A stretch of 64,000 nucleotides of DNA from Podarcis erhardii. Lineage: Eukaryota. The position numbers and the translations under genes were made by a program. The stretch lies in the NCBI GenBank assembly GCA_964252035.1, contig OZ176216.1. One strand, written 5' to 3'. Numbering within the stretch: position 1 is the first letter of the stretch; every line of letters starts with the position of its first letter. The notes under the pieces are model-generated. The model saw nothing but the letters and a program-made list of their open reading frames with translations, searched no databases and had not been told where the DNA came from. Shown piece by piece: positions 14,679-61,896 of the stretch.

Positions 14679-14753
14679 GTTATCCAAATTTTGTCGCGAC
14701 CTATGGCCGAGGATACCCTGGATTTGCCCCCAGTTACAGTTATCAGTTCCCAG
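14679..14753 (+). CDS. MSI2: Musashi-2 coding exon: (G)[24 protein letters not shown]
   Basis: 75 nt, acceptor ...cttctatattcaag|GT, donor CCAG|gtacgt, phase 1-1. Joins in frame to exon 287-401. Matches MSI2 [19 protein letters not shown](G)YQFP. Confidence 0.97.
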
Positions 14754-15146
14754 GTACGTGAAATTTTAATATGTATAATTTAATCGAGCAAAAGAAAAGA
14801 AAATTCCAAACACATCCTATTAGGGAACTTACTCATGAGCAAAGAATGCATAGGATTGCACTGCAAGTCCATAATTCAACTGAGACAACAACAGCAGCAA
14901 AGTCTCTAAATGGAGGACCTTTTGGTAGTGCTCAAGGTGTCATTTTCTTTCTGGTTTACTGAAATAAATGGCGGGGGGGGGAGAACCTGATTTCATTTTG
15001 GGTTTTAATTGGTACTGGTTATTTGTAAACAGAATTCCTTTGAAACAGCACACAATTAGGTATTTTACTTCCCTTTTTGTAAGGCACGTCTTTCTCCCCG
15101 CCTGCCCCCGCAAAGTTGAGTTTGTTTGTAGTGCTATGCAGAAGAG

Positions 15147-15208
15147 TCTCTCTCTGTCTCTGTCTCTGTCTTTCTCTTTCTCTTTCTCTTTCTCTTTCTC
15201 TTTCTCTT
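15147..15208. repeat. (TCTCTG)n/(TCTCTT)n polypyrimidine microsatellite
   Basis: Directly visible; source of the EKEK/RERE/SFSF ORFs. Confidence 0.95.
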
Positions 15209-18200: not shown

Positions 18201-18534
18201 AGTGCCTTCCCAAATCAGCATGATGTCAGCCTGCACGGAGGAGTGGGGGAGTCATTGGTGAACACACATTTTGACTGGCTGTCTCCAAATGGGTCTCTGC
18301 ACATTAAGGAAGCTTCTGGCCCCCACAACTGTTAAACCTTATATCCAGAGGATATAAGGCAGGATTGGAGCCATCCAAGTCCCTTGGAAGTAAATTGGGG
18401 GTTATTCAGAAACAGCAACTGCTAGGATACAATAAAGTTGGGTTTGATTGGATGCGGCTTTCTTTAACCATTCTCACTGTGTGTCAGAAGTATTCATTAC
18501 AGTGCAGTCCCTTTGTCAGTTCCTGTTAACAGTA

Positions 18535-20640: not shown

Positions 20641-21390
20641 TCACTTGAAAGAATGCTTATCACCGATAAAACCCTCTCCCAGGGTATCAAGATCAGAGGA
20701 GCAGGGCCTCTTGCAAATACCCTTCCTCCTGAGAAATTAAGAGAAGTGGCTCCCAAATCCATGAACTCCAAATGGTGGAACATTACTTGTCTGCCTCTCC
20801 ATCTCTCTTTCTCTCTTTCCCTCTTTCTTCCTTCTCTGTGCCTTTAGGAGGCATGGGGGGGAACCATTCCCCCCTTTTAAGGTGAGTATTCATGCTGCAG
20901 TCCTAAGCCTTGCTTGTTTTGACTCTCCTTTCTATAATGTGTCACCTTGCCTGTTTTTATTTTATTTCATTGTTATTTTATGTTGTGGTTTTATTGCTTG
21001 AATTGTGAACTGCTTTGTAAAAAAAAATGTCAGAAAGTGGTATACACGTTTAGTATATAATATATAAACCTGTCATTTCCTCAATAATTCATGGGAAGAA
21101 ATGGTGTCTGTCACCTTCTGGGAAGGTGGAAGGAATGCCACACACTTTGACAACTAAGGTCGCAATCCTCAGCATACAACTTGGGAGCAAGCCCCATTGT
21201 ACTCAATGGGACCTTCTTCTGAATAGACATGGATGGGATCAGGCTGCACTTCTAGCTTTCCTTAGCCCCCATTATGCTTTTTGAAACCAATTGAAATTGC
21301 TCGCTATCCTGTCTCCCCTTTTTAAAAAAAGTTCTCGGACTTATCTTTACAGTTTAATCTATTAATTTCTGTTCTTATTTCACTTTGCAG

Positions 21391-21431
21391 ACTATTTGCC
21401 GATTTCACAAGACATAATTTTTATCAACTAG
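21391..21431 (+). CDS. MSI2: MSI2 alternative terminal coding exon: (D)YLPISQDIIFIN*
   Basis: Strong acceptor ttctgttcttatttcactttgcag|AC. In frame after YQFP, stop TAG at 21429-21431. Nearly identical to the recalled short mammalian MSI2 isoform end DYLPVSQDIIFIN. Confidence 0.88.
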
Positions 21432-23130
21432 TTCTTAAAGATGCATAACAAATTAATCGGGGTTTACTGCAGTGCTAATGAGAGAGAGTGAGAGAGAGTG
21501 AGAGAGAGAAAGCCTGGGTGGTCTGTACATTAATATCAGTATCCACTGGAAAAAAATATGCTGCTCTTACTGACTCCTTTGGCTGACTGGACTATATTTT
21601 TTTAAAAAGAAAATCTCCATATCTTTTTCCTGTTTTTTGATTTTTCCTTCTTTTTGTTCCCCCACCCCCTGCTTTGTATGAGTTTGTTTTTTTTAATACC
21701 CACATGGAATGTAACTCACATCAGGGTTGGCTGCGGGTGAAGGCATTACAATTTCTCACAAACTTTTAGGGACAATTCTCTTGTCTTCACTGAGATGTGC
21801 TGTTTGACCCACCTTAAAAAGTCCGGAAGGAGATTTCGGCTGGCATTTATTGCTATACATCAGCTCTGAGACGCAACAGCAGCTATCCCTTGTTGGCGTT
21901 CAGAATGGTGGTTGCTACAGCTATTGGACAAATGAGGAGGAGGAATCTGATTAAAATTAATCCGGTTGGTGGAGGTCACTTTTGGTTTGGGATGGATCTT
22001 TCAGTAGCCATTATGCTGTGGACTGCTCCGCACCACCACAAAAGCCATAAACGCTGGTTCAAATAACTGACCAAGAGCTCTGCTTAGAGAACTCAGTTGT
22101 GCTCCCTCTTAAATGTAAAGCTGCCTTGCCAATCAACTCATGGACCTTGGTGTTCATCGTACGACTGACACTGAGTTGCTGCCGAAAGCAGAATCCCTGA
22201 CACCAGGTCATGTTGTGGTATCATCATGACACGTTTCCTGGTTAGCAGCAGCCCAGCCCTTCCCAGGCTTAATTGAGTGAACTGCTGGCAGCCAATTTGG
22301 CAGACTAATCTGAGTTGTTGGGATGAGGCCTGGTTGGTCCTTGAGGTGGGTGGTCCATCTGTGCAAGGGGCTTACCACCTTCAGACATTAGGTCGGGGCT
22401 GCCGTGATAGAATCCTTTGCACAGGGGCATTCCCTGCACATAGAAACCTGGATGTCTGAGTTCCAACCTAGCCTTCCTCCTGACATGCTAGCGCTCTGTG
22501 TGCAGAGACCGAAGGAGCATTCTGTTTTGTGAGCCACTGCCTGCAGTTCAGACAGCTGGGCCTCACTGTCACTGCTCTGTGGCTTTGAGACTTCCATGGG
22601 AATTGGCTTTCCAGCTGTATGACAAGTCTGGGCACCCTCCTGTATTGATAATGCAACAAAGAAAACAGGCCCTTCTACTTATTTCCTAAGTTTGTGAGAA
22701 ATTGGCTGCATGCTTACAGTAGGACTGGGATGCATTTTTAAATATATGTTTAATTCACTTGTTTAAAATGTCAAAGTCACTGCAATCGGAGTTGTGCTGT
22801 TCATTTAATAATGGTGCTTGATGTAATAACTGTTTAGTTTTTCTCTTTTTTCTCTTTTTTGCAAGCTATGGCTTTTGAAACCTGTATGGCTTTTTTAATT
22901 ATTATTTTGCGGGGGAGGGTTTTTTGCTATTATTTGCTTTGCATTTGTGATCTTGTCCTAGAATGCATGATTTTGCAGACATTTAACTGTTGTATGATTT
23001 TTTTTTCTTAATTCCTTTGGTTTCTTTTGTAAGTAGTTCATCTGTGCTTTTCTTTGCTTTTCTTTTTTGGTTAAAAAAAAAAATCCTTGTAGAAAAGGTA
23101 GAAAAAGTGATAATAAATTGTTACAATAGA
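21432..23130 (+). other. MSI2: Probable 3' UTR of the short MSI2 isoform (3' end uncertain)
   Basis: Follows the stop codon. U-rich, largely TE-free sequence. AATAAA at 23112-23117, with another at 24069-24074. Confidence 0.45.
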
Positions 23131-24501
23131 CAAGCTGTGTTTTTGCTCTCTTAGCTTGCACTTTCAATTCGGTTGTACCAAATAACCAGTACCAATAACA
23201 ATGTAATGAAAAAATACATAAGTTAGTAAAAAGCATGGCATCTCTTTTCAACATGCGTCAAAGTTTTGCTGCAGATTAAATGTTGCATTTTAGTTCAATA
23301 TATTTAAATGAAAGTATAAAAGCAATGGGAATATGTAGATTACTGGTGGGTTGTATCTTTTTTTTTATGACAGCACAAAGAATGAGCCATGCTGACCTCT
23401 GAGTATCCTAGCTGTCCATGTTAAACAAAAATAGGCTTCATGGGCACAATAATATTTTAGATCAACAGCAGCTAACTTTTTCAGTCTGAAAATCGGCCAC
23501 ATTGACTCATAGTAAACCCATACTAAGAGTCACACGTCAAAGTGGGGGTGGTCAAAAGTTTTTGTGTCGTTTTGTTATTAAGGTCAGTTGGTTGGGGGGC
23601 AATGTCACAAAACCTTTTGGCATCACAGCAGGGGACTGGAAGTATAAAGTAGTTTTTATTTTATTTTTAAAAGATAATGGTAACATTTCAAAGAACAAAT
23701 TGGTGGTCTGGGTCCTTGGAGAGCCACAATGAAGCTTTTGCATCACAGAATCACAGCAGGGGATCTATGGAGCAGTTAGTGAAAAAGAACTATCTGGGGA
23801 AAGGAGGTCTAAGGGGCACCAAAGAACCTCTTTTGGGCTGGATACGTCCTGCAGGCCATGGGTTAACCATCCCTGTTTTAGAGACTGGGATGACAAAAAG
23901 CCCACTGAATTCATAAACAAAGAAATACTCAGAAGGAAGCTCAGATCAATCGTGGACAAGCTCTTGGTTTCCAGATCTGTTCTGGAAGGTATTTGAAAAG
24001 TGTTTTTCGATGAGTTGTTGGGGTTGTTTGTTTTTTAACACATGGGAGTGAGTAGCACTCTACTGTAAAATAAATGCAATTCGTCCATCCACTGCAGTTT
24101 GCCACCTGTCTCTCTAAAAAAAAATGACACGCAAATCACATTAACGCAAATCACATGCAAGAATAAGAATACAACATTGCTGAGGCCTTCCTTCACGTCA
24201 TGCCTAATTTCGCAGGGCTCTGACCATAAAATTATTTAGGTGCTAGTTTTTCTCAGCTCATGAAATCTGCCCTAGTTTGGCCAAGCTAGACCTGTCTGCA
24301 GTGTTGGGGTGTCCATGCATGAATGTGCACGCACATAAAATGAGTAAATGAAGAGGGTGATCAAATGGAGTTTTTACATCCTGACTTAGCTGTGTTCAAC
24401 CCTGGGTAGGACCCCAAAAACTTATTTAATTCTGAAAGTTTCAGGTTTCATCAAAATTTGTGAAATGTGTCAGACTGCAGTTCTGATGAGACTTTCATCT
24501 A

Positions 24502-27308: not shown

Positions 27309-27379
27309 TGGGATCAGAAGCATATAGACAAGTAGTGCAGGTTCTTCAGGACTTACATTCTATGGTCCTGCCTATTGGT

Positions 27380-27700
27380 AGTAGTCAGCAGTCTTACATC
27401 TGCTTTCTGGACTAGTTAGCAGCTTCAGGACAATCTTCAAGGGTAGCCTTACATAGAGCACATTACAGTCCTCCAGTCAGGAGGTTAGTAGAGTGGGGAT
27501 TACCATCCAGGAACAGCCAAAGCTAATAGTAGGCACTCCTTGCACAAAGGTCACTCGGGCTTCCAGTTAAAAGAGTTGGCTCCAGGAGCACCTCTAGACT
27601 ACAAATCTGTTCTTTCAAGGCAGGTGCGACTCTATCCAGAACATACAATCTATTTAATTCCTGGACCAGAGAACTACCAATCCACATCTGTTATGCAGGA
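27380..27700 (-). mobile_element. Decayed L2 fragment
   Basis: gggtagccttacatagagcacattacagtcctccagtcaggagg is the antisense of the L2 SRLDYCNAL-type region. Confidence 0.4.
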
Positions 27701-30389: not shown

Positions 30390-32341
30390 GTGTAGAGGCT
30401 ATTAGCAGGTGTGTGGCTCCTTTGAATCTAAAGCAGACTCAGAATTTTAAAGGGATGCATTTATATACATTTTTGGAATTTATTTCTAAATTTCTGTTTT
30501 TTAATCTGGCCCATTCCAAACGGGGCCAGGAAGTCCACCCCTCATTTCTTCTCACAGTTCCCTTAGAGGAACCCAGAGGTGCAGCTGCTGGGAGACTTTC
30601 CATGAACTATGATTCACAGAAGCCAAGCAGCACAAATGGAAGCACAGGTGCATGGCGAGTGGAAAGAGGGTTGTCCCGCTGGAGGACTGGGGTCAAATGA
30701 ATCGCATGCCCAGCCTGTTTTGCTTCCAAGGCATCTTGGTGCCTCCGAGTGTTTGCTGTTGCCTGGTGAGCATTGCAAGTTGGGTAAAATCTATCAGCAA
30801 AGTGGCAGTGACCCTTTGCTAAGTGGCAACCTCTTATGGGGAACCATGAAAAGCTGGTCAGGGAAATGGCCCAAAATGTGTGGTGGCGGTGGTTTTAGGC
30901 TGCAAATATCTGACATAGGCAACTGCGAGCCAGTGGGCTAGTAATGCTAATGGCAGCAGCAGATAACTTTTCTATCCAGCTGTTCACCACAAAACAATGT
31001 TAAATAATATTTAGGCCACCTGTACTATTTATGCTGTGGCTGTTGTGCATTGATTTCCCCACCCGTTAGGAATTTTCACGTTTTTGGCTACAGTTCTTCA
31101 TAGTCTGAACCTCCACATGCTTCCCAATTGTTTTCTCCCTCAAATCTGGAAAACCTGGGCAACTGCTTTTCAGTCCCCATGGGCCATCTACTAGTGAGAG
31201 GGTGAGAGAAAAGGATGTGGAGGCTGGGAAGAAAACCCCCCAACCCAACCAGACCCCAGGGAATTCTTGCTTGCACGCTCCCTTCTTTTGAGGCCTCTGT
31301 TCTTGTCAGCCCCTGTGCCTGGAATACCAGAGTAGGCTCTCTAATGATGACCTCATTATGCGTGCCACTACTGAGCCCAAAATGCACTAATTTCCTGACC
31401 CGGTGAAATATATTTTAATAAGCTTGATCTAGAGCAGCGTTTAAAGACAAAGGGAAACACTTAACGTGGCTGTCAAAATAAAGCACTCTTGGGCAGATGT
31501 TAAAAATGTTAATAGGATTAATCCATCAGAAGCACCCAGGAGAGCCTGCCCTGTTTGTATACCTCTATTTGGCATTTTAAAGCACAGGGTTAAACTATTT
31601 CTTTGGAGAGAGAAAGAGAGGGGGAAATGGATTAAATTTTGAGGTCGTGCAATTTTTCTTAAATTAGTTTATAGCTTGCTGTGCTGCCCAGTAATGCCTA
31701 TATTTGATTCTATGGATTTTTAGTGCTTACCGTGGGATCTTCAATCAAACCCAGTTACCCAGGCAAGTTCATTACACTTAAAAGTTTTTTAGACCACCTC
31801 TTCCTCCCCCACCCCCGAACTTTTTAGTAGAATTCTGTCTCTCTTGATGCAACGATGGACATCTCTGTTGTGCTTTTAATAATCTCTGTAAAACATTCCT
31901 GGCTTTGTGTACTTTTGTTTCAATGGGAAATGGAACAAATACTCACCGGGGCACTAGGAAGATTTGCGCTGACAGCATCCTTTTTTGGGTTGTGCCCAAA
32001 GTGAGATTTGCCATGGGCTGCATCTGTGACATACAGGCGCAGAACGCAACGAGAAGTTCCATCGTGTCACTCATGGTATTTAACATTTCATGAAATGGCT
32101 GGATGAGATCATCCAGACGTGCAATGTCTGGAGTGCGGCATCATCTGTAGATCAGTCATACCCAATTCTAACTCTCCCTTTCATCTGACCCTGGGAATAC
32201 AGTGTGAATTCTAAATAGGGGCCTTAAGTCAGCCGTGAATTAGATGAGTGTGAGCAAAATTTGAAAAGACACATGTATTGTTAGCTGGGCCGATGCTGGA
32301 GATATGTACCTTTATTGGACAGGGTTGTACTTCCCCTAAAG

Positions 32342-38599: not shown

Positions 38600-38623
38600 C
38601 CCTATTACCATATTTAAATGCAA
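38600..38623 (+). CDS. MSI2: MSI2 24-nt in-frame microexon: (A)LLPYLNA(S)
   Basis: Acceptor tgtttttttccttcaacag|CCC, donor GCAA|gtatgt. 24 nt, phase 1-1, no stop. Gives YQFP-ALLPYLNAS-FPAAAY. A similar peptide is recalled from predicted vertebrate MSI2 isoforms (not verified). Confidence 0.75.
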
Positions 38624-38651: not shown

Positions 38652-38751
38652 GTAGTTTAGAGACACTTTAGCCTCTCACTTCTGTTCAGCTTTTCCCTGT
38701 TAGCAATACATGTAGCTACGGTGATAGAACTAGAGCTAGCAGGCTTGTAGT
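38652..38751 (+). promoter_or_regulatory. UAG cluster (putative Musashi-binding intronic splicing enhancer) downstream of the microexon
   Basis: 9 TAG at 38653, 38658, 38669, 38701, 38713, 38725, 38731, 38737, 38748, including GTAGT twice. Confidence 0.6.

Positions 38752-40865: not shown

Positions 40866-40896
<31 letters not shown>
40866..40896. repeat. (CA)n microsatellite upstream of the 41010 exon
   Basis: About 15 units. Confidence 0.97.
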
Positions 40897-41009: not shown

Positions 41010-41069
41010 GTTTTCCGGCAGCAGCCTACGGACCAGTAGCAGCGGCAGTGGCAGCAGCAAGAGGATCAG
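41010..41069 (+). CDS. MSI2: Musashi-2 coding exon: (G)FPAAAYGPVAAAVAAARGS(G)
   Basis: 60 nt, long pyrimidine tract then ...cacggccag|GT, donor TCAG|gtaggg, phase 1-1. Matches the MSI2 Ala-rich segment. Confidence 0.96.
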
Positions 41070-41126
41070 GTAGGGGGGGCCGTGGAAGAGGCGGCTACAT
41101 GGCATACCTTCAGAATGCAGGGCCAG
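41070..41126 (+). CDS. MSI2: Alternative 5' splice-site extension of the preceding exon: GRGGRGRGGYMAYLQNAGP(G), an RGG box
   Basis: 57 nt (19 codons), open in the MSI2 frame, ending at a good distal donor CCAG|gtaaaa that keeps phase 1. Confidence 0.7.
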
Positions 41127-44100
41127 GTAAAAGCTCTGTCGGTATTCTATGTGGCTGCAGCTGTCCATCCCTTTCTCTGACTTTTCTCACAGTGATCTGG
41201 GGGTGCGGGGATACCCACCAAACAAAACCAAATACTACAAGCAGAGCCCATAAGACTCAGAGCAGAGCATAGGCTGTAAGACCAGATGGTCTTTGCAGAT
41301 CCACCAGTACAAAGTCCACCCTACTGGGAGCTGTCAACTGGACCTTTTATGAAAATGTCAAGGACAACAAAAGTTTTCATTTCTCCACAGTTTGCACTGG
41401 GCTAACAACGCAACCACACTCACACCCACATATACACACACCTGTTAATTCCTCAACTTGTTAGGGCAGCAACCTGCATCTCCAACTTTAATGTTTGGGA
41501 CAAATGCAGTGAGTAAGTTACTCTCAGTGGTGGCCCAATCCAAAGCAAGAAACCACATTTCCATTAATATCAGCAAGGATTCCAAATTATGGTGTTTAGG
41601 AATGCTCTATCAAACTTTGATCTATGGAGGGTACCATGATCAACCTCCTACAAATCAGCTTAGCATTCAGCTATTTAGTAAGTTCTGTTTATTCATCTGT
41701 CTCGTGAGAAAAGGGAACTATAGTGCGTGTTCCTGCCCTTTGAAATGGTGGCACTCCAGATCTGGCCAATGCAAACAGGTCTAGTATTATACAGAATAGG
41801 GTGAGCAGTGCAGCTTGCCTTCTCTCGTGCCATTTTTAGGTGGCAAGTCTGGTCAGCTGCACCTGGATGCTAGAAAAATAGTTCTCCCCAGTTACTTTGC
41901 AGTTCAGACATCTCACTAAAATATGGTTGGGGTGCTTAAGCATGGTTCTGGTGTGATGTTTGAATTGACAAAACCATAGTTTGCAATTGGCCAACAAACC
42001 AGAATCTGATACAGTGAGGGAAGTTGATTTACAAACTGGATTTTGTGCTAACTCTGGTTTGATGTGATATTGATAGCCATTGTTTGACCTCCAGAAGCTG
42101 TACCAAAAGAGAGATGAGAGTGATTTGATGGACTTAGGAAGCTGAGTGGCAGAAAACAACAGCAGACAAACTGTTCTAAACTGTGGTCTGCTAGTATGTT
42201 TGGAAGCTCATACCAAGGTTTTGGTTCTAAACTAGGGTTAGCACAAATGGCGACATGGCATGATGTCTAAATTGCACCATAGTTTGAAGTCAGTTGCAGT
42301 TTTGGGAGTGCAACCTAAATCAGGGGTGTTCCACCTTGGCATAAATTGGAATGGCTCTCTGAAGGGTATAACCTTTTGCAGACACCTTTAAAAATACTTT
42401 TTGCTCTTTGAGCTTGAATATTGTTCCATCTTTTGTTACCTGCTGCAAACTCTGGCTCCAGTTTCATGAGAAATGTTTGCCCACCTATAAAAAGCTCCAC
42501 TTCCTTCCACTCTGTTCTCCAGTGCCCCTCCTGCTAGGGGAAGTAGTTAAGCCGCTATTATATCCTAGCATTCCAATTTAGGGGAAAGTGAATTATCCCT
42601 TTGGCATAATTGAGTGAAATCATGAGTGGGCTGCTAAGACTTACCAGTGCCTCTCTCTTGCTGTATTTGCTTGTTGGCTGATACCTTGGTTGTGCCTGAA
42701 GCCATTCTGAACCCTAAATACAAAGCAAGGACAAAGGGTAGACTGCTGCTTTCAGTGGGTTTTATTGCTCCCCAATCTATCTTGCTTGCTCATCTCTGTG
42801 TACTGTCTTGTGCGTTTATCCGGCCGTTTGTTCTTGCTAATATTAACTGGGTTATTGCACCGGGGGTGGCGGTGGGGGCAATTGGAGACAACACGATTGG
42901 GCCCAAATTCCCCAGCCAGATTGTACACGTTGAGACATGTAGCAAACAACTTGGAGGTAACTGTTTTATTCAGCTCTCTCATGATGAAGCTTGTTCTTTG
43001 ACATGAAAATTTCTAAACTCATTAGCTATAGGCCTCTTCAAACCGACACAAAATAAATGGTGCCAGAGATGGGGAACGTGCTGTCAAGCAGCAAGACACA
43101 CACCACAATAGACTTTGGCGGGGGGGGGGGGACTGAATTATTTAGGGTCCAAAGTGGGATGTTTGGAGAACTCCGTTCCATGCAAACTGGCACTGCTTGC
43201 GGGGCTACAAAGGATTCATCCGTAGCAGTTTATCGTTGTATGTAGGGAAAGTCCAAGGGTTGGTTTGCTCAAAGATAGCAAAGGGATTTTTTTTTTCCTT
43301 TCCTTTTTCAAAATCCTTTTCTGAAAAGGATTCCATTTATTATTTGAGGAAGAATGGACAGATTCCCTCGTCCCTTACCTACACTTTGGGCCCATTTGGT
43401 TCCAGTTTAATTTTAAATAGAGATGATCAGTTTTCCCACAGAAAGGACAAGGGTTCTGCCAGATTAAGTCTGATCTTCACTGTTGTCCTGTTTTAATCAG
43501 AGTGCCCCATCACAGCTGAACTGAGTGTCAGCCAATTTCTCTGCTTGATATCATTTGGTTGGTTTTTTTGTTTTTGTTTTTTGTTTTCAATTTTTTTGGA
43601 TTTTTTTTCTTTTTTAAAGAACAGATTAACTTTGTGATACCAAAAAAAAGGGAAAAAAAGAAAATTCTAACCCTGAAATTAACACCAACATATATGGCAA
43701 GTTTAAAGAGCAGTATGGTGCCCTGTATATATTTCTTGTGTGTTTTTGGAAAAAATCTCTGCACTTGCAGATCTACCCTAGTGCTCCCTCAAGGAAACTG
43801 TTTGTTGATGTGCAGAAGTGGTTTCCATTGACAAAGAAGCCTCTTCGGCTCAGGGACAGCATTCCATTTGCAGCCATTTCCATCAAAGGGAATAGCATTG
43901 ATAGTGAAGTGTATTTAAGAGCAATGGAGTCAGCTTCATGTTAATGGCACTCAGGCCTGATTCATTACAGAGGGGGAATGACAAATGGAAGTATTTGGCT
44001 TCAATATTTTGATGATTAGAGCAATATCACACTTGCAAGATGACTTAAGTGACTACTAAAGCGAAGACACACCTGTGTCTTAAGATGTATGAATGTTAAA

Positions 44101-46254
44101 TGTCTAAACCACAAGACATCAGTTCAGTGTATATTTATTGATCTCTCACTGCTGAACAGATTTGGGGGGGGGGGAGGTCTGCACCCCTGCAGAAGTTTGT
44201 AGTTGGGCCCTGTGATTTCAGCACTGCCGTACACACAATTATTATTATTTATTAGAATAGTATACTACCCTATACTCTTAGGTCTCAGGGTGGTTCATAA
44301 CATAAGAATTTGTGTGTTCATGGATCTTTAAACCACACTTCATAAGGCTGGCTGTTGGATGTAGAGAATTCTGTCTTTACTCCCCACTCTGGCCTCTTGT
44401 GCATCCCGTAAGGGTACTCTACTAATTACAATCCACAGGCAGATGACCCCTCCCTGGAGCAAGGGCCTATGCTTTTAATTTTGGTGGGGAAACATCTATT
44501 TTATTTTTATTTTTTCTTTACTAAATTGCTATACTACCTTTCATCCGAGGATCACAGGGCGATATTAGCCTGGGAGTTGGGGCTGTATGTTTCTTCGTTC
44601 ATATTTATAGAAACATTTATGTAATGTACCTCCTTTCAGCCCTGAAAGGTCCCCCAAGGCAGGTTACAACAGTGAAAACACTTCTGTAATTACAACTGGA
44701 GAGCATTGAGGGAAGCCAAGAGAAAGCAAATGAAACCAGCCTCCCAGCAGGCCACAACACGAACTAAAACTTTGGTAGGAAAAAGAAAGTATTGACCACC
44801 CCGCCTCCCTGAATGGCATTGTAGAAGGGGCCTATCTTATCTCCTTTGGGAGAGAGTTCTGCAGCTGTGGGACTATCACCAAAGAGGCTCTGCCTGGTAA
44901 CCGTCATGGGCAGTGCCCATGTGCCAAACGTTAGCCAGACCGTTATTAAAACCACGCAATTGTTGAGGCCATTGCAACCCTCCATATAAGCCAAGCCTTT
45001 ACACCCACCTTGACAACATTTCACTTTCCTCTTATTATGTTATTGATGAATCAGGACCTGGGTCACATTGGCATGATGGTCTGCATCTTGTAACAAACTC
45101 TTCCAATGCACAAGTTTCACTATCAATACCACATTTCTGTTACGATTCCAAGCATGTATGGATTTCGTGGGCAGGCTTCCCCATTCAGTTTGATGGAGGT
45201 GGCAGCTTGATGCACAAACCTCTTTGCCTGTTGGCAAAATCCACTTGTAGGGAAGGGAGCCATTGGGGCAGAGCTTACTGGAAAGATATTGATGGTTGGA
45301 GGTGATTTTTTCCTCTGACATACTTAAAGCACCAGTATTTAGTGTGCCCCGCCCAGTTCAGACACTCAACCAAGCTTCGTCAGCAGTCCATGAAGTGGGT
45401 GGGTGCCCTTCTCCTCCCCCCTGGGGGAGCTCTGTGTATCCAGTGCCCTGATTCATGCAGTTCTTCCTGCATTGGGCCATCATGCATACAGGCCCCTGCA
45501 TGGAGCACCCCTCACACGCTTTATTTGGATAGATGGTGGAAGACCACCATGTCTGTTCTTCTACCCCGTTAATAGTACACTGAGCCGATTTCACCCTTTC
45601 CTGAAAATGCTGTTTGCTTCTTCGTTTCACAAAGGTGAAGTTGGGGAGCGGGGTTAATTCGGGGTTTTGCTTTGTTTTTTAAAGGAATATAAAATTTGGC
45701 AAGTAAAATGCATTAGCCAGATAGTTCTGTGGCTTTAGTTTCTTCCCTCGTGGCTGGAAAATGGGATGGCCAGTGATTCTGTTGCTTGGCCGTGGGGAGG
45801 CACCAAAGTCTACTTGCTTGACCACTTGTGAGTGACTGCACTAAGAACGAAGTGGTAAAACCCCCAAACAGAAAGATCCCCCAGAGTTCCTTCTTGCTCC
45901 CCTCCACCTTGGCCAGAGTCCTGCTCCTACTTCTGAAATCCTGAGTTCACCAGTTCCTTACTGTCCTTTATACTTGCCAGCTATAACCAATCTCATAACA
46001 TGAGCTACTGACCTTGATGGTGAGTGTGAGCAGTTATGTTCTTGTTGTTTTCTCTCTTGCTTGGTTGGGGCTGCTGTGAGAGAGGGTGTCTCTGAGGCAT
46101 TCTTTCCGGCCTCTCTTACACTGGGACGTGCACTCCTCTCAAACACTCTTCTGAGCACGCTCAGCAGGAAGGTTTGTCCACACCTATTAATCCTCTCTCT
46201 GTGTCCAGCTTCTTGTTAGTAGCAGCTGGTTGCATGTTTTTTTTGCTTGTTCAG

Positions 46255-46412
46255 ATGAAACGGTTTAAGAAACGACTCATATCCAACTCTTGAAAAATGT
46301 CTCTCTCTCTCTCTTTCTCTCTCTTTTTAAAAATATATATTTATTTTTGTTTATTTTAGTACACTTTCTCTCTTTTGGTTTTTTTAAAAATTACTTTCCC
46401 TTACTTAATAAA
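46255..46412 (+). other. Candidate alternative terminal exon ((D)ETV* plus short UTR with AATAAA)
   Basis: Acceptor ttttttttgcttgttcag|AT. In phase 1 reads G|AT GAA ACG GTT TAA (stop 46266-46268). AATAAA at 46407-46412, followed by GU-rich sequence. Confidence 0.3.
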
Positions 46413-46510
46413 ACAAAACACTTGTTGTTCGTGAAACATCTCACATCTCCCCTTGCCTGTTCTTAGAGTGTTATGTATCTGTGGGACTGAACTAAATGCA
46501 TGCACTTGTC

Positions 46511-46678
46511 GTAGTTGTAACCGGTAGCAGTAGACGTAGTTGTAGAACATGCATTGTTGAGTTGATATTATAGGTTCTTGTCGGCTCGAAAGAGCATGGC
46601 AGTTGCAGTGTAGCCGCGGTTTGATTGGAAGTGTAGGTCAACCTGTGTAGAGCAATGCTGAACACCTGGATGCATAGT
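46511..46678 (+). promoter_or_regulatory. RUAG cluster (putative Musashi-binding array)
   Basis: 10 TAG (46512, 46525, 46531, 46537, 46543, 46571, 46611, 46634, 46648, 46675), all preceded by a purine and 8 as GTAG. TGCATG at 46497-46502. Confidence 0.55.
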
Positions 46679-52199: not shown

Positions 52200-52620
52200 T
52201 ATCTGTAGCTGCACAAAAGGCCTCAATTTAAAATTAACAGGAACAATAGCCTATTAATGTGTTACAGTGGGAGGCCAGAGTTTCAGTTGCCATAGCAATG
52301 GAGTTCGGCTCATTTGTTTTGTAGATGAATAATTACTACACAATTAGAGTAGGCTAAAAATAAAGGGTCCCTTTCTTCCCAGTCACTCATTAATATTAAT
52401 AAAAGGCCTGTCCAGGCTGTGGTAAACAATTAATGCAAATCTGGCCACCAGTGGTAAAAAGGTAGCAGTAAAAGTCTCATTGCTAAAACGAGAGTGAAAA
52501 AGTAAGAGAGATTATTCCATTCCTTTGGATAAAAAAGGCAAATGATTTGGAAATTATTCTATATTGACCCAGGATGAGTTGTTGTATTGCTTATAATGGA
52601 ATGGCCGCTGGGCTTCTGAA
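52200..52620. promoter_or_regulatory. Candidate conserved intronic enhancer (RFX X-box, FOX/SOX-octamer composite)
   Basis: GTTGCCATAGCAAT at 52286-52299; GTAAACAATTAATGCAAAT at 52422-52440; several TAAT/ATTA cores; not repeat-like. Confidence 0.45.
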
Positions 52621-53163: not shown

Positions 53164-56100
53164 CTCTTAGTGAAACTAACATAGACACTTACCTTGGAGG
53201 GCCCATATTTGTCTACAACACAGCAAGCAAAGCAGGCAAAGAAAGATGAAGTATTTGGGTTTCAGATGAGGGATCATATAGAGAGTAATGGCAAACAGGT
53301 ACCTGGCAGCAGTAATCAACCATGTGAAGGTCTAGAGCACATCAACTTAGCTTTATTCTGCTGCCTTCTAACCCAGTGAAGACACTGATTGGGGAGATAT
53401 TCCTTGGAAGCACCTTGGGCCTCACCTGGCACCTTCTTTCAGAAATCCACTTCAACTTTTTACCATGCTGTATTCCGCTACATGCCACCACCAGCTCATT
53501 CCTCGCTTTATCAACTTGTGTTAAAGATCATGTAACCTCTTTGTTCTGCCCACTGTTTTCAGTGACTCACTCATGATCAGATAAGACATTCAAAAGATAA
53601 GTATTCTGAATATTCCTTTCTCCTCTTTATTCATTGGACGAGCTCCTTGGAGTCCAGACTGCTCTCGAATGCAGGTGTGAGATAAGGAGCACATGCTATA
53701 TATTGTGGCTTCGTGAGTAGCTATTTTTAGCAATAAAAATTCACCATGATAAGAATATGACCAGCAAAACACCAGCTTCCATTGCTGGAGGTGAAGAAGC
53801 TACACAGCAAAATGCTTTATGATATAGTGGCATCAATCGTCATGCTGGCTAATGGCAGAAAAACAAAAAAGTGAAAATGAATAGCTCAGAAGGGGAACAG
53901 GTAATCAGTGGTTGAAGTTGCTGTCAAACATTGACTTCTTCCTTCTATTCCAAGAAACAAAATGGCTGACCAGTTGATTGGCATGGTCAACTATTTTGAC
54001 AGGTTGCCTTGGAATCCCCAGCCTCTATGATTGTTGTCTTCTCTCTCGCCACCCCCACCCCCCACTCAAAAATAATAATAATATCTGGACGAGATGTCAA
54101 AATATGGTGCAGGTTTTTCCGAGGGGATGGTTATCTTCTGCCCTCCAAAACTATGTAACAAAAAGAGAGAAAAATGTAGCACAGCATTTGAAAGGTCGAC
54201 ATTTGTTTGTTGTTAAGGATCTAATTAGAAGCATGAGAGGGAGCAGACTGGCTGCTTGCTTGGCTAATTAGTGACATGCACGAAGACCACTTTGAACTTC
54301 AAGGACACAGAGCTATTAGCACTTACATCAAAAATGGATTAAACTTCTGTGCTTTTGTAATGATTAAAGATGAGCCCCTCAAGTGGAAACTCTTTTGTCA
54401 AATGCTGCAAGAAGAACTGGAGCTCTGATTGCCGTTTCTCTTGGAGAAGCTTTGCACGGCCTCGCGTGTGATGGCACTGGCCCCATCTGAAAATGACACT
54501 GTGTTTAATTCGCAATATGGGAGATTTTGATTAGGTTATAAATATTGATTGCTCATGAAACATCACAGCTAAGATGAGAAATGTATTTATTTGCCTCCAT
54601 GAGCAAGTGCAGGATTTTATTTTGTGAGGGGTTTTTTTTATATACTTTGCTGTGTGTCAAGTATTTTGTTAATCTGTTCCCAATCACTTGTCGCCAATCC
54701 TTTATCAGTGTGCAAGTTTAAACTCAGCTAAAACAGCTATTAAGGATGCAGTTGTTTCTAATATACTTATGGCTTTGGACGGGTGGCTAACTTAGACGTC
54801 AAAGTTCCCCAGCCTATCGCCATTTTAGTGGCTTTAAAGAGGTTGTCTAAATGCCCCGGCGCCTCATCTGTCTGACACGGCGAAAGAGTAATGCCCCCAC
54901 ACCCTCCCTACACTACAGTTGCTATGTCCCTAGCAGAACTTTGGGAAAGAGGAAATCCTTCCTATCTTATGATAAGCCATCTTGAGGATAATACTGATGC
55001 AAGTTGAGAGGTGCACATCTTTCCTGCTCTCCTGAGTTCTCATTCTGGCCTCTCCGTAGGCCACAACAGACAAGGTTTGTCAACCTGGAACAGGAGTAAT
55101 TTTGGCCATTTCTACAATTCAGCACCATGTGATCTGTGCAAAACTCTTTGATGCACCATCTCCATATAGAAACCAGTTGCAAGAGACAGCTCTTTTCTTA
55201 ATCATATTCTCAACCTATCAGCAATATTTGCAAACTGCGCTTCACTGTATGTATTCTGGATTCAGTCTTTGCCAATGTTCCTCCATTCCTCTGTCCCATG
55301 TATCCTCTTGTTGATGCTGCTCTTAAGCTACAAATGCAACTGGTAACACCACCACCCTTTCTGACCACATTATGCAGCAATAGATGTATGGCATTTCTCC
55401 TACATCCACTGACCCTTTTGAGTTGTATGGATTTCAGTGGGATTTGATCTTGCTTAGCTGTCGCTGGCTTGTGTCCACATTCCACAAAACAGGATGCTAA
55501 AGCCTGGAGATTGCAGCTCTTTTTATACATGCCATGGGGATTTAGCTTCTACAAATGTATCCGAATATCTTTTGAGCTGTATCATGAACCCAGCTGCACA
55601 ATGGCTCTTTGAGCTGCATTTAACCTCCCTTGTGATTATGTTACCCAGTTATGTTACATGAAGCAATCAATATGTTCCAAAGCTTGCAGAGAGGAATGTT
55701 CTAACCTTTTGAACAGACTCTAAAATCCAGGTGGTCTTCATTTTGTACAGGGACACCAAGACTATTTCCTATTTAGAGCAACATCGTGGAAGTGACACCA
55801 GTAGCATAGTCAGATAATTTTAGGCTTACTAACCTTATACACAGACACACCTCTTAGATCTTAGGTTTAGTCATGTTGCATTTTGTAGCCCTCTTGCTCG
55901 TTTTGCTGATTGGGGCTCTGGTCATCTGCCCCAAAGTCCAATTCTGAGACCACCATCATGTAGCAGATGAGAGATTTAAGACTAGAATATTTACAGGCCC
56001 TTCCAGCATGATGGATGTTTGCTTTTAGGCAGTGGGTGGGCAACCTGCAACCAAACCAGCCTAATGCATGTTGCCCTTCGTCTCATCTCATGGAGCCCTT

Positions 56101-58355: not shown

Positions 58356-58590
58356 TTAGAAGTCTCCACAGCAGCAGTCTTTCAGGTAACGTGGCCTAGG
58401 GTTGTCCAAGGCTTTATATGTTAATAACAAGACTTTGAACATGACACAGCTGGCAGCCAGTCCAGGTCCCTCAGCACAGGTGGAACATGTGTGCGTCCCG
58501 GTGCTCCAGTCAACAATCTGGCAGCTGCATTCTGCACTGCCTGCAGCTTCTCCGCCAATCTTGAGGGAAGCCCCACACAAGGAGCATGTC
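58356..58590 (-). mobile_element. L2 ORF2 C-terminal fragment
   Basis: Minus ORF contains FKVLLLTYKALDNPRPRYLKD, compare L2 FKVLVLTFKALNGLGPxYL. Confidence 0.7.
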
Positions 58591-61500
58591 CTATTGTTGG
58601 GTTCTTCCAGCCTTACAGTTCTGAAGCACGCTTTGGACCCGTTTAGCTCCAACATTGTACGTTGGACCTCTACTAGCAACCCAAATTAAGCAACGCCAAA
58701 GAACAGCCGCTGGTTTTTGAAGTATAAAAGTTGGAGACGGTAACGGCAGGTTTCCCGTTGGCTTGTATGCCCAGCGCTACATGTGCTGAGTGTCGGCGCT
58801 CCTTGTTCGACAGCGTCTCCCTGATGTACACATTACTACACGCAGCTTCTGCCTCCACTTTCATCTGTATCGGCAGCATTAAATATTATTATATCATTTA
58901 CTCTCTCGAGCAGGAAAATGATGTTTGGCAGCTTGTTCTATGAATTTTTCATAAAGATAAAAAGCGGCCTAATCTTGTGAGCTTTAACTCTCAGTAGCAG
59001 TAATGGCTTTGATTTAAAGTGTTTTGTCTTAATGATAGTTATATTGAAAATTTCCTGCTGCTTTCAAGCACGCACGGTTATTATCATAAACACTGATGGT
59101 GCAAACGGCTGCCAAATTGCGTGTGGCTGCTTATGGCAAGAGAGGAGAGAAAAAGAGAGACAGGGAGCTCTGTCGACAGGTTGCTGTCAGTGAGACCTTT
59201 CAATCTTGAGAGCATTTTGAGTCTTCCCGAAGTTTTGCTTTGACCTCCAGAAGTGACTTTTGGGGTTCTCTTCACTTCTCAGCACTGTGGTCCACAGCCA
59301 GGCAAGGATAGCAAGATGAAGCAGAATCTCAGGCAGTGTTTGTACAGCTGTTCTTCTGGAAAGTACCCTTAATAAAGGAGCGTTTACACACGCTGCCATC
59401 ATTCTGTGCTAAAGTCGGAACACACAGTTGTTAAGTGTCCTCTGGAGGGCCAAGGCCCTCAATAGAGACCAATTATTTACATCCACTTGGGCAGAAATTC
59501 CCCATGTTGCACGATCCTGCAGAAAATGGCCTACAAACAGATTTAGGGTCATTTCCCAATGGCTGATGCACTTGGAAAGAGAAAGAGTTGGAAGCCCAGG
59601 GTTTGTCAGTCCTGCAAGGAACACTACACCAAGGGGAATTAGTTGGCATGGAAATTAATTCTGCATGAGTGAGTTCTGCTTTGAATGTCCTTGTGGGGGA
59701 AATCACTTCCCCTCTCATTTTTCTCGGTGTGCATTCTTAGGATGTGTGTTGAGAAACAGAAGAGAGTCAACATGCATCGTTCTGTCTGGCTTCTGGGAGA
59801 TCTGCCATACATGTCTTTGGGACCTAAATAGGTAGCTATCTGACCCTTCACAAGTTACAAAGGCACAAGGCAAGTGCCTGCTTTGCAGCTCATATTTAAG
59901 AGTACTGGTCAAACCTCAAAAAAGAGATAAACTCAGTAATACAGGTGCTTTGTGCTACGATCTAATGAGAAAGAAACTATCACAAAACTCTGTAGAGATT
60001 CATGGAAGTTTGGAGCAGAAAAGTAATTTCCTGAGAGTTATTTATTTTTCCCTGTTCAATTCTTTCCTGAATTCACCATCTGGAGGCTCTGTTTTCATAA
60101 TGGAGTGATCTATTTTGGTGATACAGTTGATGCTGAAAGTAATAAATAAATAAATAAATAAAACTTCCTTTCTGTTTTATTTAAGTTCATCTTTTCTGTC
60201 TTGCAAGTTCAGACCTGCTCTTGCCTTTTGCTGGAAGGCAATTATGAATGTGGAAGAGCAAAAGTCTTCCTGGTGCTGGGGGGCGTGGGGGCGTTCTTTG
60301 CTGTCAGCAGCCTGTGCCGTTGTCATGCAAGTGGCAAACAATCTTTCCTCCTTGTTTACCACAGATATTAAAATGTACCTCTTAGTCCACTTCGCTTGGG
60401 AGAATAAATGTGTAGACTGGTTTGTTAAAATGCATGCAGACATTTTTGCACCAACAAATTTGAGAATTGCTGTCCTTTAAAGGATGCCCATGATGTGAAA
60501 TAAGAACAAGCTTAATATCCCAAATCCCAACCCATTGTGAAGTTCACTCACTGCTTTGATCAAACTTGGCTACTAGCCATGATGGCTATGCTCTGCCTCC
60601 ACTATTTGGAGACGGTATACTTCGGAATACCAGTTGCCGTAAACCACAGGAAGGGAGAGTGTTGTTGCACTCAGCTCCTGCTTGCAGGCTCCCCATTGAA
60701 GCATCTGGTGGCCACTGGGAGCACAGGATGCTGAACAACATAGGCCATTGCCCTGATTGAGCATGGCTCTTAGTTCTTTTGAGATTCCCCCTGCTTAGCT
60801 AGGTTAAATGTGGAGTAGATCAACTATTTGTGATACTTGCCTATTAATTTTTGTTACTTATACTAGTTCTCAGTCTGAAGGTTGTGACGAGGTTTAATAG
60901 AAATCAACTTCTGTTTACTTCCTACTGGGACCCAAACCAAATGAAATCTACAAACTGCCTTACTAAAGCCATAGCTTTATATGGTATGAGACTCATTCAT
61001 CTCATCTGGGGCTCTGTGGAGTTCAACTTTTATGGCCAGGGCATTAACACAAACTCCAAACCTTGCACTATGCAGTACTAAAATGGAGGTGGGGTGGGGG
61101 TGATCTTGTAGGATCCAGTACAACAGGAAATCCAGGTAAGATCAAATAAGGAACATTTATCAATAAATACATAGATATACTTTGGTACATATAGTTATGC
61201 ACACGCACGCACACACTTTGTATACATTGCACCTGGTGGTTGGGGATTTTTTTTTTTTTTTTGGCCTTTTATTTGTTTGGGGAACGGGACCTCATGTGGA
61301 TGAACCCCTGTAGCTTTGCAAGGTTAGGCCTAGTCAGCTTGGTTCGGCTTTTCTCTACACTTCTCAGTATGTATTGCATTGGTTGTCATTTTAATCAGTT
61401 GGGGCTCTGTGTTTTCATACTTCTGTTCTTGTGCCTGTTTTGGAAAAGAATATATAGTACATCAGATGGTGAGTTTATGTTTTTTTGGTTTTTTACAAAA

Positions 61501-61719
61501 TCCAGGCTCAATGCCTCTGAACCTATGAGTCTGAGTTAAGGACCCTGGAGCATGTATGATCAAGCTGTGGTCCACTTGCTCCTCAAAATCCTACATACAT
61601 ATATTTTTGCTCTTGTTTCCGTGATTTGTAACTGTAAAAAAATAATAATAAAGTACAATTTAATATTGAAAATAAGAACCAATCCAGTATCCACAATGAT
61701 AGAGTCACTGTATCTCCAG

Positions 61720-61896
61720 GGATCCCCGATTACGGTTTCTATTCTCCGCCCGGTGACCAACGGGCTCAATTATCCTACGCGGACTATGGTTCCATGGGGC
61801 CTCGGGTGGCTCAGATGCTTCGTAGCGAGCACCCTGCTTCAGCGAGTAACTCCCCCCTTCACCACCTTCCCAGCCCGGATCAATTTAAAAGCCCAG
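61720..61896 (+). CDS. MSI2: MSI2 177-nt cassette exon: (G)IPDYGFYSPPGDQRAQLSYADYGSMGPRVAQMLRSEHPASASNSPLHHLPSPDQFKSP(G)
   Basis: tatctccag|GG ... CCCAG|gtttgt. 177 nt = 59 codons, phase 1-1, no stop. 12 CpG in 177 nt against a CpG-poor background. P/G/S/Y composition resembles the MSI2 C-terminus, and the peptide resembles long non-mammalian MSI2 isoforms as recalled. Confidence 0.8.

What the first reader, a model, noticed from the sequence alone, without database searches (positions are those of the whole stretch)
14679..61896. Combinatorial C-terminal isoform system of MSI2
Every junction from 401 onward is phase 1, and all internal options are multiples of 3 (24, 57, 177 nt), so they combine freely: 8 full-length variants plus 1-3 truncated ends. 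Each option has a different nearby cis signature: UAG array, G-run, RBFOX element, or polyA plus RUAG array. Inference: a multi-input, partly self-regulated switchboard that rewrites the disordered effector tail while leaving the RRMs intact.
Basis: inference. Interest (0 to 1): 0.7.

Follow-up and report, generated by a model that had tools for sequence, protein, structure and literature searches.

The report
Alternative tail exons of Musashi-2 gene
This stretch holds the part of the Musashi-2 (MSI2) gene that encodes the protein's flexible tail.

Summary
The window carries the middle and C-terminal exons of a lizard-type MSI2 gene on the + strand.

Each option is orthologous to exons already in public gene models. 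Anolis isoform X5 (427 aa) holds all of them. Fish, shark, frog, turtle and bird models show the options in many combinations, with up to about 30 isoforms per species.

- A 39-nt cassette at 31724-31762 with a GC donor.
- A stop-introducing exon at 46034-46171, conserved at nucleotide level to sharks.
- The RUAG array is the start of the 3'UTR of an annotated alternative last exon (46467, ECYVSVGLN*), not a tail behind the AATAAA at 46407.

The cis signatures are real and conserved:
- Both UAG arrays are the two densest TAG clusters in the quail locus too.
- GTAGGGG at the proximal donor is invariant to sharks.
- A GCAUG about 85 nt after the 177-nt exon recurs in four of five species.

Published mouse data already show the orthologous 24-nt exon falling from PSI 0.85 to 0.38 when Msi1 and Msi2 are deleted.

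No RNA evidence for this species could be obtained. Verdict: real, correct in kind, mostly already known.

The parts
287..401 (+). Constitutive MSI2 exon (end of RRM2 and linker: [38 protein letters not shown]); ends in phase 1
   Evidence: Peptide identical to annotated tetrapod MSI2. 87% DNA identity to the quail locus.
14679..14753 (+). 75-nt exon (G)[24 protein letters not shown], phase 1 to phase 1
   Evidence: Identical peptide in all tetrapod MSI2 hits.
21391..21432 (+). Coding start of the alternative last exon 'DYLPISQDIIFIN*' (the human variant 2 / exon 11b type). The 3'UTR continues downstream.
   Evidence: Described for human as DYLPVSQDIIFIN (PMC5599597). Same peptide in turtle and frog models. 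Exon and 3'UTR conserved with quail over 21329-21779 and 22673-23211.
31724..31762 (+). 39-nt cassette VLTVGSSIKPSYP, phase 1 to phase 1; acceptor ttttag, GC donor (cccag|gcaagt).
   Evidence: Orthologous VLSVGSSIKPSYP is annotated in Anolis sagrei and A. carolinensis, Sceloporus undulatus, Crotalus tigris and C. adamanteus, always together with the microexon. No match in the quail locus.
38600..38623 (+). 24-nt microexon (ALLPYLNA; the next codon becomes Ser)
   Evidence: ALLPYLNAS is annotated between the same two exons in snakes, turtles, birds, frogs and a whale. Exon plus about 40 nt upstream is 86% identical to quail. The mouse ortholog is a 24-nt cassette with Musashi-dependent inclusion.
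38653..38750 (+). UAG array: 9 TAG within 100 nt, starting 30 nt after the microexon donor
   Evidence: window maximum; the quail locus has 9 TAG in the 150 nt after its microexon, the second densest TAG window of that 36-kb locus. The sequence itself aligns only loosely there.
41010..41069 (+). 60-nt exon (G)FPAAAYGPVAAAVAAARGS with proximal donor CAG|GTAGGG
   Evidence: 83-85% DNA identity to two sharks.
41070..41126 (+). 57-nt extension reached through the distal donor CAG|GTAAAA. It adds the RGG-type peptide GRGGRGRGGYMAYLQNAGP and begins with the G-run 41073-41079.
   Evidence: Homologous peptides in Anolis, Sceloporus, sharks, eel and cyprinid models. GTAGGGG is invariant in lizard, quail and two sharks.
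41127..41178 (+). Nearly invariant intronic element directly after the distal donor (GTAAAAGCTCTGTCGGTATTCTGTGTGGCTGCAGCTGTCCA)
   Evidence: four-species alignment; blastn to sharks.
46034..46171 (+). Stop-introducing cassette. It is 138 nt from acceptor gagcag|, with an in-frame TGA (VMFLLFSLLLGWGCCERGCL*). The alternative acceptor at 46083 gives 89 nt and a frameshift. Donor AGGAAG|gtttgt.
   Evidence: Used as an internal exon in bird gene models (VMFCCFLSCLVGAAVREGVSEAYFPASLTLGRAHLLSNTLLSALSGK, then exon 12 out of frame) and in a whale model. 78-80% identical to sharks, with frame-breaking indels.
46467..46495 (+). Coding start of a second alternative last exon (acceptor ctgttcttag|), encoding ECYVSVGLN then TAA
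   Evidence: Identical tail ...ARGSECYVSVGLN in Anolis sagrei isoform X17 / A. carolinensis X19 (P0287). The nucleotide sequence is nearly identical in quail, with a 1-nt indel that changes the peptide.
46497..46678 (+). RUAG array (10 RUAG) directly after that stop codon. It is therefore the start of its 3'UTR, and it lies 326-507 nt downstream of the stop-introducing exon. It also holds two conserved GCATG.
   Evidence: window maximum; almost base-for-base conserved in quail up to about 46570; densest TAG window of the whole quail locus. Absent after the homologous block in sharks.
61720..61896 (+). 177-nt cassette (G)IPDYGFYSPPGDQRAQLSYADYGSMGPRVAQMLRSEHPASASNSPLHHLPSPDQFKSP
   Evidence: 39 database representatives, 31 with E<1e-10. 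Spliced into MSI2 models of eel, cyprinids, sharks, frogs, Anolis and Sceloporus. No Pfam family.
61986..61991 (+). TGCATG (RBFOX-type element) 90 nt after the 177-nt exon's donor
   Evidence: GCATG lies at +91 here, +82 and +83 in two other tetrapod contigs, +87 in Chiloscyllium and +205 in Mustelus. Background is about 1 per kb.

Best explanation
The region is the alternatively spliced part of MSI2 that encodes the disordered C-terminal tail.

A chain of phase-1, in-frame units can be included or skipped without touching the RRMs. The units are 75, 39, 24, 60 (+57) and 177 nt here, and an 18-aa alternative acceptor lies further downstream, outside the window.

Three other exons end or break the reading frame:
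- the DYLP last exon at 21391;
- a stop-introducing exon at 46034-46171;
- the ECYVSVGLN last exon at 46467.

Inferred regulators, each placed by a conserved motif:
- Musashi proteins bind the UAG cluster just downstream of the 24-nt microexon and promote its inclusion. This is shown for the mouse ortholog and inferred here.
- An RBFOX-type GCAUG about 85 nt downstream promotes the 177-nt exon.
- A G-run at the proximal donor, together with an invariant element after the distal donor, sets the 60/117-nt choice.
- The UAG-rich stretch at 46497-46678 lets Musashi act on the truncated or stop-containing forms.

The exon anatomy and its conservation are shown. The identity of the regulators is inferred, apart from the mouse microexon.
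For: - Exon structure, phases and lengths were read from the sequence.
- Orthologous peptides are spliced in annotated MSI2 proteins. The 177-nt exon and the RGG extension occur in fish, sharks, frogs and lizards. The microexon occurs in frogs, snakes, turtles, birds and a whale. The 39-nt exon occurs in squamates. The stop-introducing exon occurs in birds and a whale. ECYVSVGLN occurs in Anolis.
- Many combinations are annotated. RefSeq numbers reach X30 in duck, X26 in Anolis carolinensis and X23 in a shark.
- Motif conservation: both UAG arrays are the top two TAG windows of the quail locus. GTAGGGG and the post-donor element are invariant to sharks. GCATG sits at +82 to +91 in four of five species.
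- Experiment in mouse: the 24-nt Msi2 cassette has PSI 0.83-0.87 in controls and 0.29-0.45 in Msi1/Msi2 double-knockout retina, FDR 0 (PMC9509328).
- Musashi bound downstream of an exon promotes its inclusion (PMC4991804; PMC9509328).
Against: - There is no RNA evidence for this species.
- Gene models may combine exons that never co-occur on one molecule.
- In the mouse knockout the Msi2 mRNA of photoreceptors is itself reduced. The PSI drop may therefore partly reflect the loss of photoreceptor transcripts rather than a loss of Musashi-driven splicing.
- The strict Musashi element (G/A)U1-3AGU is not enriched in either array, only the UAG core. Four other TAG clusters of similar density lie elsewhere in the window.
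- The G-run is also coding (Arg-Gly), so its conservation does not prove a splicing role.
- The 39-nt exon has a GC donor here and no bird counterpart.
Confidence: 0.8

Rival explanations
1. Only a few isoforms matter. Most of the annotated combinations are low-level splicing noise or products of automatic gene modelling, and there is no coordinated 'switchboard'.
For: - All combination evidence comes from gene models.
- Papers describe only a handful of forms: 328/324 aa, the 18-aa insert and variant 2.
- In squamate models the 39-nt exon never appears without the microexon. That argues against free combination.
Against: - The optional exons keep frame and peptide sequence from sharks or frogs to lizards, which noise would not.
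- Their flanking motifs are conserved.
- The mouse microexon is included at 85% in retina.
Confidence: 0.25
2. The UAG arrays are bound by other UAG-binding proteins (for example hnRNP A1/A2-type silencers), or are 3'UTR and intronic elements unrelated to Musashi. There would then be no self-regulation.
For: - Only the UAG core is enriched, not the strict Musashi element.
- Similar TAG clusters occur elsewhere in the introns without a known exon nearby.
Against: - eCLIP defines the Musashi site in retina as a UAG core (BUAG), enriched downstream of Musashi-activated exons.
- The orthologous mouse exon is in the published list of Musashi-activated exons.
- Array position is conserved in the bird even where the sequence is not.
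Confidence: 0.2
3. The block 45956-46640 is mainly a conserved non-coding element such as a transcriptional enhancer. Its use as exons in gene models would be incidental.
For: - The conservation is at nucleotide level with frame-breaking indels.
- Two other shark-conserved blocks in the same intron (52309-52440, 54200-54375) look like homeodomain-site enhancers.
- The block holds a TAAT-type site.
Against: - The acceptor and donor (AGGAAG|GTTTGT) are conserved to sharks.
- Independent gene models in several birds, a whale and Anolis splice to it at the same sites.
- The encoded ECYVSVGLN tail is identical between the window and Anolis.
Confidence: 0.2

Closest known systems
RefSeq/Ensembl MSI2 isoform sets of other vertebrates (e.g. 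Anolis sagrei X5/X13/X14/X17, Anolis carolinensis up to X26, Anguilla rostrata X1-X14, Chiloscyllium punctatum up to X23, Anas platyrhynchos up to X30)
   Same: They have the same optional exons at the same junctions: the 39-nt, 24-nt, +57-nt and 177-nt units, the stop-introducing exon, and the DYLP and ECYVSVGLN ends. The peptides are 90-100% identical to those encoded here.
   Different: - One residue differs in the 39-nt exon (T for S).
- The donor of that exon is GC here.
- The stop-introducing exon is 138 nt with an in-frame stop here, against about 140 nt with a frameshift in birds.
- The bird 27-nt FVLRANRP microexon was not found in the window.
Human MSI2 variant 2 (NM_170721), alternative exon 11b, tail DYLPVSQDIIFIN (PMC5599597)
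   Same: The alternative last exon sits in the same intron, and its 13-residue tail differs at one position (I for V). It removes the C-terminal regulatory phosphorylation sites.
   Different: The paper notes that no murine ortholog was found. Here the exon and its 3'UTR are conserved between lizard and quail.
Human MSI2-324 18-aa insert from an alternative 3' splice site of exon 12 (PMC13228403)
   Same: It is another in-frame option of the same disordered tail. It is shown to switch localisation and translational activity, which is a precedent that small tail inserts matter.
   Different: That exon lies downstream of this window. None of the options here has been tested functionally.
Musashi-activated photoreceptor microexons (Ttc8 exon 2A, Cep290, Cc2d2a, Cacna2d4; PMC4991804, PMC9509328)
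   Same: They are exons of 30 nt or less, conserved across vertebrates, with a UAG cluster in the proximal downstream intron. The mouse Msi2 24-nt exon is in the same published list of exons that lose inclusion in the double knockout.
   Different: Here the target is the Musashi-2 gene itself. The papers do not discuss this exon in their text.
Conserved poison exons of RNA-binding protein genes (SR proteins, hnRNPs; established knowledge, not tested here)
   Same: The stop-introducing cassette is conserved at nucleotide rather than peptide level over about 450 million years, and it is flanked by motifs for the gene's own product.
   Different: NMD sensitivity and dependence on Musashi are untested. 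I found no paper that links MSI2 to a poison exon.

Membership tests
MSI2 (Musashi-2) orthologue | Exons encode the MSI2-specific linker and tail peptides in the known order | tested here: met
   The peptides of exons 287-401 and 14679-14753 are 100% identical to annotated tetrapod MSI2. The order of exons is collinear with the quail and shark MSI2 loci.
MSI2 (Musashi-2) orthologue | Two N-terminal RRM domains | not testable with these tools
   Only the last residues of RRM2 lie in the window. The RRM exons are upstream of it.
Musashi-activated microexon (photoreceptor type) | Exon of 30 nt or less, conserved across vertebrates | tested here: met
   The exon is 24 nt. Its peptide is annotated from frogs to birds and mammals. 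DNA is 86% identical to quail. It was not found in sharks or in the fish models seen.
Musashi-activated microexon (photoreceptor type) | Cluster of UAG motifs in the proximal downstream intron | tested here: met
   There are 9 TAG in 100 nt, the window maximum. The same density is seen at the homologous place in quail.
Musashi-activated microexon (photoreceptor type) | Inclusion depends on MSI1/MSI2 | not testable with these tools
   Published for the mouse ortholog only: dPSI 0.47, FDR 0, with the confound of reduced photoreceptor Msi2 mRNA. There is no data for this species.
RBFOX-activated cassette exon | (U)GCAUG within a few hundred nt downstream, conserved | tested here: met
   GCATG lies at +91, +82, +83 and +87 in four species and +205 in the fifth. 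A single copy alone would not be significant, at 0.6 TGCATG per kb.
RBFOX-activated cassette exon | Inclusion changes with RBFOX level | not testable with these tools
   No expression or perturbation data were available.
G-run (hnRNP F/H type) control of 5' splice-site choice | Run of 3 or more G next to the regulated donor, conserved | tested here: inconclusive
   GTAGGGG is invariant, with 7 G here, 6 in quail and 4 in sharks. The run is also an Arg-Gly codon pair of the extension, so coding constraint could explain its conservation.
Poison (NMD-coupled) exon of an RNA-binding protein gene | Inclusion introduces a premature stop | tested here: met
   The 138-nt form has an in-frame TGA, and the 89-nt form shifts the frame. 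Bird models read exon 12 out of frame.
Poison (NMD-coupled) exon of an RNA-binding protein gene | High nucleotide conservation without peptide conservation | tested here: met
   78-80% identity to sharks and 83% to quail over 687 nt, with 1-, 2- and 4-nt indels.
Poison (NMD-coupled) exon of an RNA-binding protein gene | Transcripts with the exon are degraded by NMD, and inclusion responds to the gene's own protein | not testable with these tools
   There are no reads. No paper was found.

The most novel reading that the evidence does not exclude
The shark-to-lizard conserved stop-introducing exon (46034-46171) and the adjoining UAG-rich stretch (46497-46678, conserved between lizard and bird) may form a negative feedback device. 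High Musashi would drive MSI2 pre-mRNA into stop-containing or truncated forms. This would explain the 'robust feedback loop' of unknown mechanism that keeps MSI1/MSI2 protein constant when gene copies are removed in mouse photoreceptors (PMC13175383).
Probability: 0.3. Interest if true: 0.6.

Novelty: already known. Interest (0 to 1): 0.35.

Why it matters
MSI2 is a stem-cell and cancer RNA-binding protein whose reported activities conflict. Recent work shows that an 18-aa tail insert alone flips its localisation and function (PMC13228403).

A map of all the tail options helps in choosing which isoforms to test. It covers their phase compatibility and the conserved motifs beside each one.

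What is not in the papers I could find:
- The UAG, G-run and GCAUG signatures are conserved at the orthologous places.
- MSI2's own microexon is a Musashi-dependent exon. The data for this sit in a supplementary table only.
- A deeply conserved stop-introducing exon lies next to a conserved UAG-rich stretch. This makes the recently reported Musashi dosage feedback directly testable.

Tried and rejected
- The word-index protein search with the 177-nt exon peptide found nothing, because of the length limits of that tool. The exhaustive search then found 39 relatives.
- The run search found no run on record as RNA. X1-X16 are only guessed to be RNA.
There is therefore no read-level evidence.
- A shark 'LPYLN' hit upstream of the 60-nt exon (L004:4175) has no splice sites and was rejected as chance. 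No shark match to the microexon region was found.
- I considered a last exon 'DETV*' from the acceptor at 46255, ending at the AATAAA at 46407. I rejected it: the stop is not conserved in quail (DETVQETTHINS*), the acceptor is not aligned in sharks, and no gene model uses it.
- The bird 27-nt microexon FVLRANRP and the Anolis X26 tail were not found in the window.
- Rfam found no family in the window. Pfam found none for the 177-nt exon peptide.
- The strict Musashi element is not enriched in the arrays.
- The supplements of PMC13175383 hold no Msi2 splicing rows.
- Two human entries that appeared in a cluster listing were not analysed.
Full report
**What is there.** The window has no N and is about 44% G+C. 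On the + strand it carries consecutive exons of a vertebrate MSI2 gene.
- Exon 287-401 encodes [38 protein letters not shown] and ends one base into a codon.
- Exon 14679-14753 is 75 nt and encodes (G)[24 protein letters not shown].
- An alternative last exon starts at 21391 and encodes DYLPISQDIIFIN then TAG.
- A 24-nt microexon at 38600-38623 encodes ALLPYLNA. Its acceptor follows a long pyrimidine tract and its donor is gtatgt.
- Exon 41010-41069 is 60 nt and encodes (G)FPAAAYGPVAAAVAAARGS. A second donor at 41126 adds 57 nt, GRGGRGRGGYMAYLQNAGP.
- A 177-nt cassette lies at 61720-61896.

**Are the options real exons?** The 58-residue peptide of the 177-nt exon was searched alone, by reference.
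- The word-index search found nothing because of its length limits.
- The exhaustive search found 39 representatives, 31 of them below E 1e-10.
- Several are spliced MSI2 models in which this peptide sits between ...AAARGS and the next exon. They come from eel (RefSeq isoforms X1 to X14, 347-425 aa), cyprinids, two sharks and the frog Ascaphus.
- The same proteins show the RGG-type extension after ...ARGS, for example GRGARGRGGYMAYPQNVGA in a shark.

Using database MSI2 proteins as queries, I collected 285 vertebrate MSI2 sequences.
- The microexon peptide ALLPYLNAS stands between the same two exons in models of Crotalus, Liasis, Caretta, Oxyura, Anas, Motacilla, Cuculus and Otus, of three frogs (ALLPYLNAS, AILPYLNAS, ALMPYLNAS), and of a whale.
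- Cluster members of the squamate hits show that Anolis sagrei and A. carolinensis isoform X5 (427 aa) contains every option at once. X14 lacks only the 177-nt exon, and X13 has only the two small cassettes.
- RefSeq numbering reaches X30 in duck, X26 in Anolis carolinensis, X23 in a shark and X22 in a turtle.
- Across the models, the RGG extension, the 177-nt exon, the microexon and the downstream 18-aa insert occur in most pairwise combinations.

The exons are therefore real and old, and they are already annotated. The exact peptide of the 60-nt exon (one alanine fewer than in most tetrapods) is shared with Podarcis lilfordi and Salvator merianae proteins. This fits a lacertoid lizard, though I did not establish the species.

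1. A 39-nt phase-1 cassette at 31724-31762 encodes VLTVGSSIKPSYP. Its acceptor is ttttag and its donor is GC (cccag|gcaagt). The ortholog VLSVGSSIKPSYP is annotated in Anolis, Sceloporus and Crotalus, always together with the microexon. It has no counterpart in the quail locus.
2. A blastn of the window against two shark MSI2 loci, fetched through their proteins, gave five collinear conserved blocks.
   - Two are the 60/117-nt exon and the 177-nt exon.
   - Two (52309-52440 and 54200-54375) are rich in TAATTA-type sites and have no open frame. They look like enhancers.
   - The fifth, 46002-46224, is 78-80% identical to sharks and part of a 687-nt stretch 83% identical to quail. It has no conserved reading frame, because 1-, 2- and 4-nt indels break every frame.
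   - Bird models nevertheless splice this fifth block in as an internal exon (…ARGS|VMFCCFLSCLVGAAVREGVSEAYFPASLTLGRAHLLSNTLLSALSGK|). After it, exon 12 is read out of frame. A whale model uses a shorter version.
   - In the window the exon runs from the acceptor gagcag| at 46034 to the donor AGGAAG|gtttgt, last base 46171. It is 138 nt with an in-frame TGA. The alternative acceptor at 46083 gives 89 nt and a frameshift. Either way the reading frame is ended.
3. The acceptor ctgttcttag| at 46467 opens ECYVSVGLN then TAA. This is exactly the tail of Anolis isoform X17/X19 (…ARGSECYVSVGLN).

It is therefore the beginning of the 3'UTR of an annotated alternative last exon. The AATAAA at 46407 lies upstream of this exon, and the next AATAAA is at 48050. 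I rejected the idea of a last exon 'DETV*' ending at 46407, because its stop and acceptor are not conserved and no model uses it.

**The cis signatures.**
- UAG array after the microexon:
  - Nine TAG lie between 38653 and 38750. This is the highest count for any 128-nt frame of the window (mean 1.5). Four other clusters with 8-9 exist elsewhere.
  - The test that matters is the quail locus. Its mean is 1.1 TAG per 150 nt, and its two densest windows in all 36 kb are at the homologous places. One lies right after its microexon (9 TAG). The other is the homolog of the RUAG array (10 TAG).
  - After the microexon the quail sequence aligns only loosely. It is the motif density that is kept, not the sequence.
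  - The RUAG array itself is almost base-for-base conserved in quail, together with two GCATG.
  - Sharks have neither array.
  - Only the UAG core is enriched, not the strict (G/A)U1-3AGU element. The eCLIP-defined Musashi motif in retina is a UAG core (BUAG).
- G-run: GTAGGGG at the proximal donor is invariant in lizard, quail and two sharks. So are about 50 nt after the distal donor. The run doubles as Arg-Gly codons, so its splicing role stays open.
- RBFOX element: one TGCATG is not significant alone, at 0.6 per kb. However, GCATG stands at +91, +82, +83 and +87 from the donor in the window, two other tetrapod contigs and one shark, and at +205 in the second shark.

**Published experiments.**
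- The DYLP tail is human MSI2 variant 2 (exon 11b). It lacks the regulatory phosphorylation sites and cannot activate translation (PMC5599597).
- An 18-aa insert from an alternative acceptor of exon 12, downstream of this window, sends human MSI2 to the nucleus and abolishes translational activation (PMC13228403).
- Musashi bound downstream of an exon promotes its inclusion (PMC4991804; PMC9509328).
- Supplementary Data 3 and 12 of PMC9509328 list a 24-nt Msi2 cassette (chr11:88368211-88368235), flanked by a 75-nt and a 63-nt exon. Its PSI is 0.87/0.85/0.86/0.83 in controls and 0.29/0.37/0.45/0.43 in retina with photoreceptor-specific Msi1/Msi2 double knockout (dPSI 0.47, FDR 0).
One caveat applies: the knockout also lowers photoreceptor Msi2 mRNA, which could shift the tissue-level PSI.
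- The paper's text does not discuss this exon.
- I found no paper that links MSI2 to a poison exon.
- A 2026 paper reports a robust feedback of unknown mechanism that keeps MSI1/MSI2 protein constant when alleles are removed (PMC13175383).

**What could not be done.**
- No sequencing run on record as RNA holds the stretch.
- Nothing is therefore known about expression in this species. From that point on, no letters of 46132-46212 were sent to any search tool.
- Exons were searched singly by reference.

**Verdict.**
- It is incomplete, because it misses one cassette and two frame-ending exons and misplaces the polyA relation.
- It is not new, because the exons are annotated in related lizards and many other vertebrates.
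- The most novel residue is the conserved stop-introducing exon next to a conserved UAG-rich stretch. It is a testable candidate for Musashi dosage feedback, to which I give about 0.3.

Noticed in passing
window 52309-52440 and 54200-54375: Two blocks in the intron before the 177-nt exon are 74-76% identical to both shark MSI2 loci. They have no open frame and are rich in TAATTA / ATTAAT homeodomain-type sites. They are probably deeply conserved enhancers.
   Followed up: partly
window 773-1071, 4616-4814, 8105-8384, 12328-12415, 13722-14000, 31387-31475, 35113-35452, 43165-43268, 43663-43720: Further collinear non-exonic blocks are 70-88% identical to the quail MSI2 locus. Their nature was not examined.
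   Followed up: no
window 27327-27527: An intronic cluster with 9 TAG per 150 nt also has the window's highest count of strict Musashi elements (5 in 200 nt). No known exon lies nearby and there is no quail match. It is unexplained.
   Followed up: partly
window 6349-6498 and 55737-55886: Two more TAG-dense stretches (9 and 8 per 150 nt) are not tandem repeats and are not next to any exon I could identify.
   Followed up: partly
L005:32945 (quail) and bird proteins P0178, P0204, P0222: Birds have an extra 27-nt microexon (G)FVLRANRP after the 60-nt exon. No counterpart was found in this window by peptide pattern, although flanking blocks (43165-43268, 43663-43720) are conserved.
   Followed up: partly
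protein P0232 (Pelecanus crispus isoform X3): In place of the microexon this model has a longer insert, EHAVVRTPLPPSPLLPYLNAS. From memory it resembles the constitutive segment of the MSI1 paralog at the same junction. If so, the microexon may be the remnant of an ancestral Musashi exon. This was not tested, because no MSI1 sequence was fetched.
   Followed up: no
L003:87869 and L004:80380 (sharks): Sharks have a further in-frame cassette (G)SAPGLNSHLLTWPQPLVKMT between the 177-nt exon and exon 12. No counterpart was seen in this window, which may end before that position.
   Followed up: no
window 40866-40896: An (AC)15 microsatellite lies about 115 nt upstream of the 60-nt exon's acceptor.
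   Followed up: no
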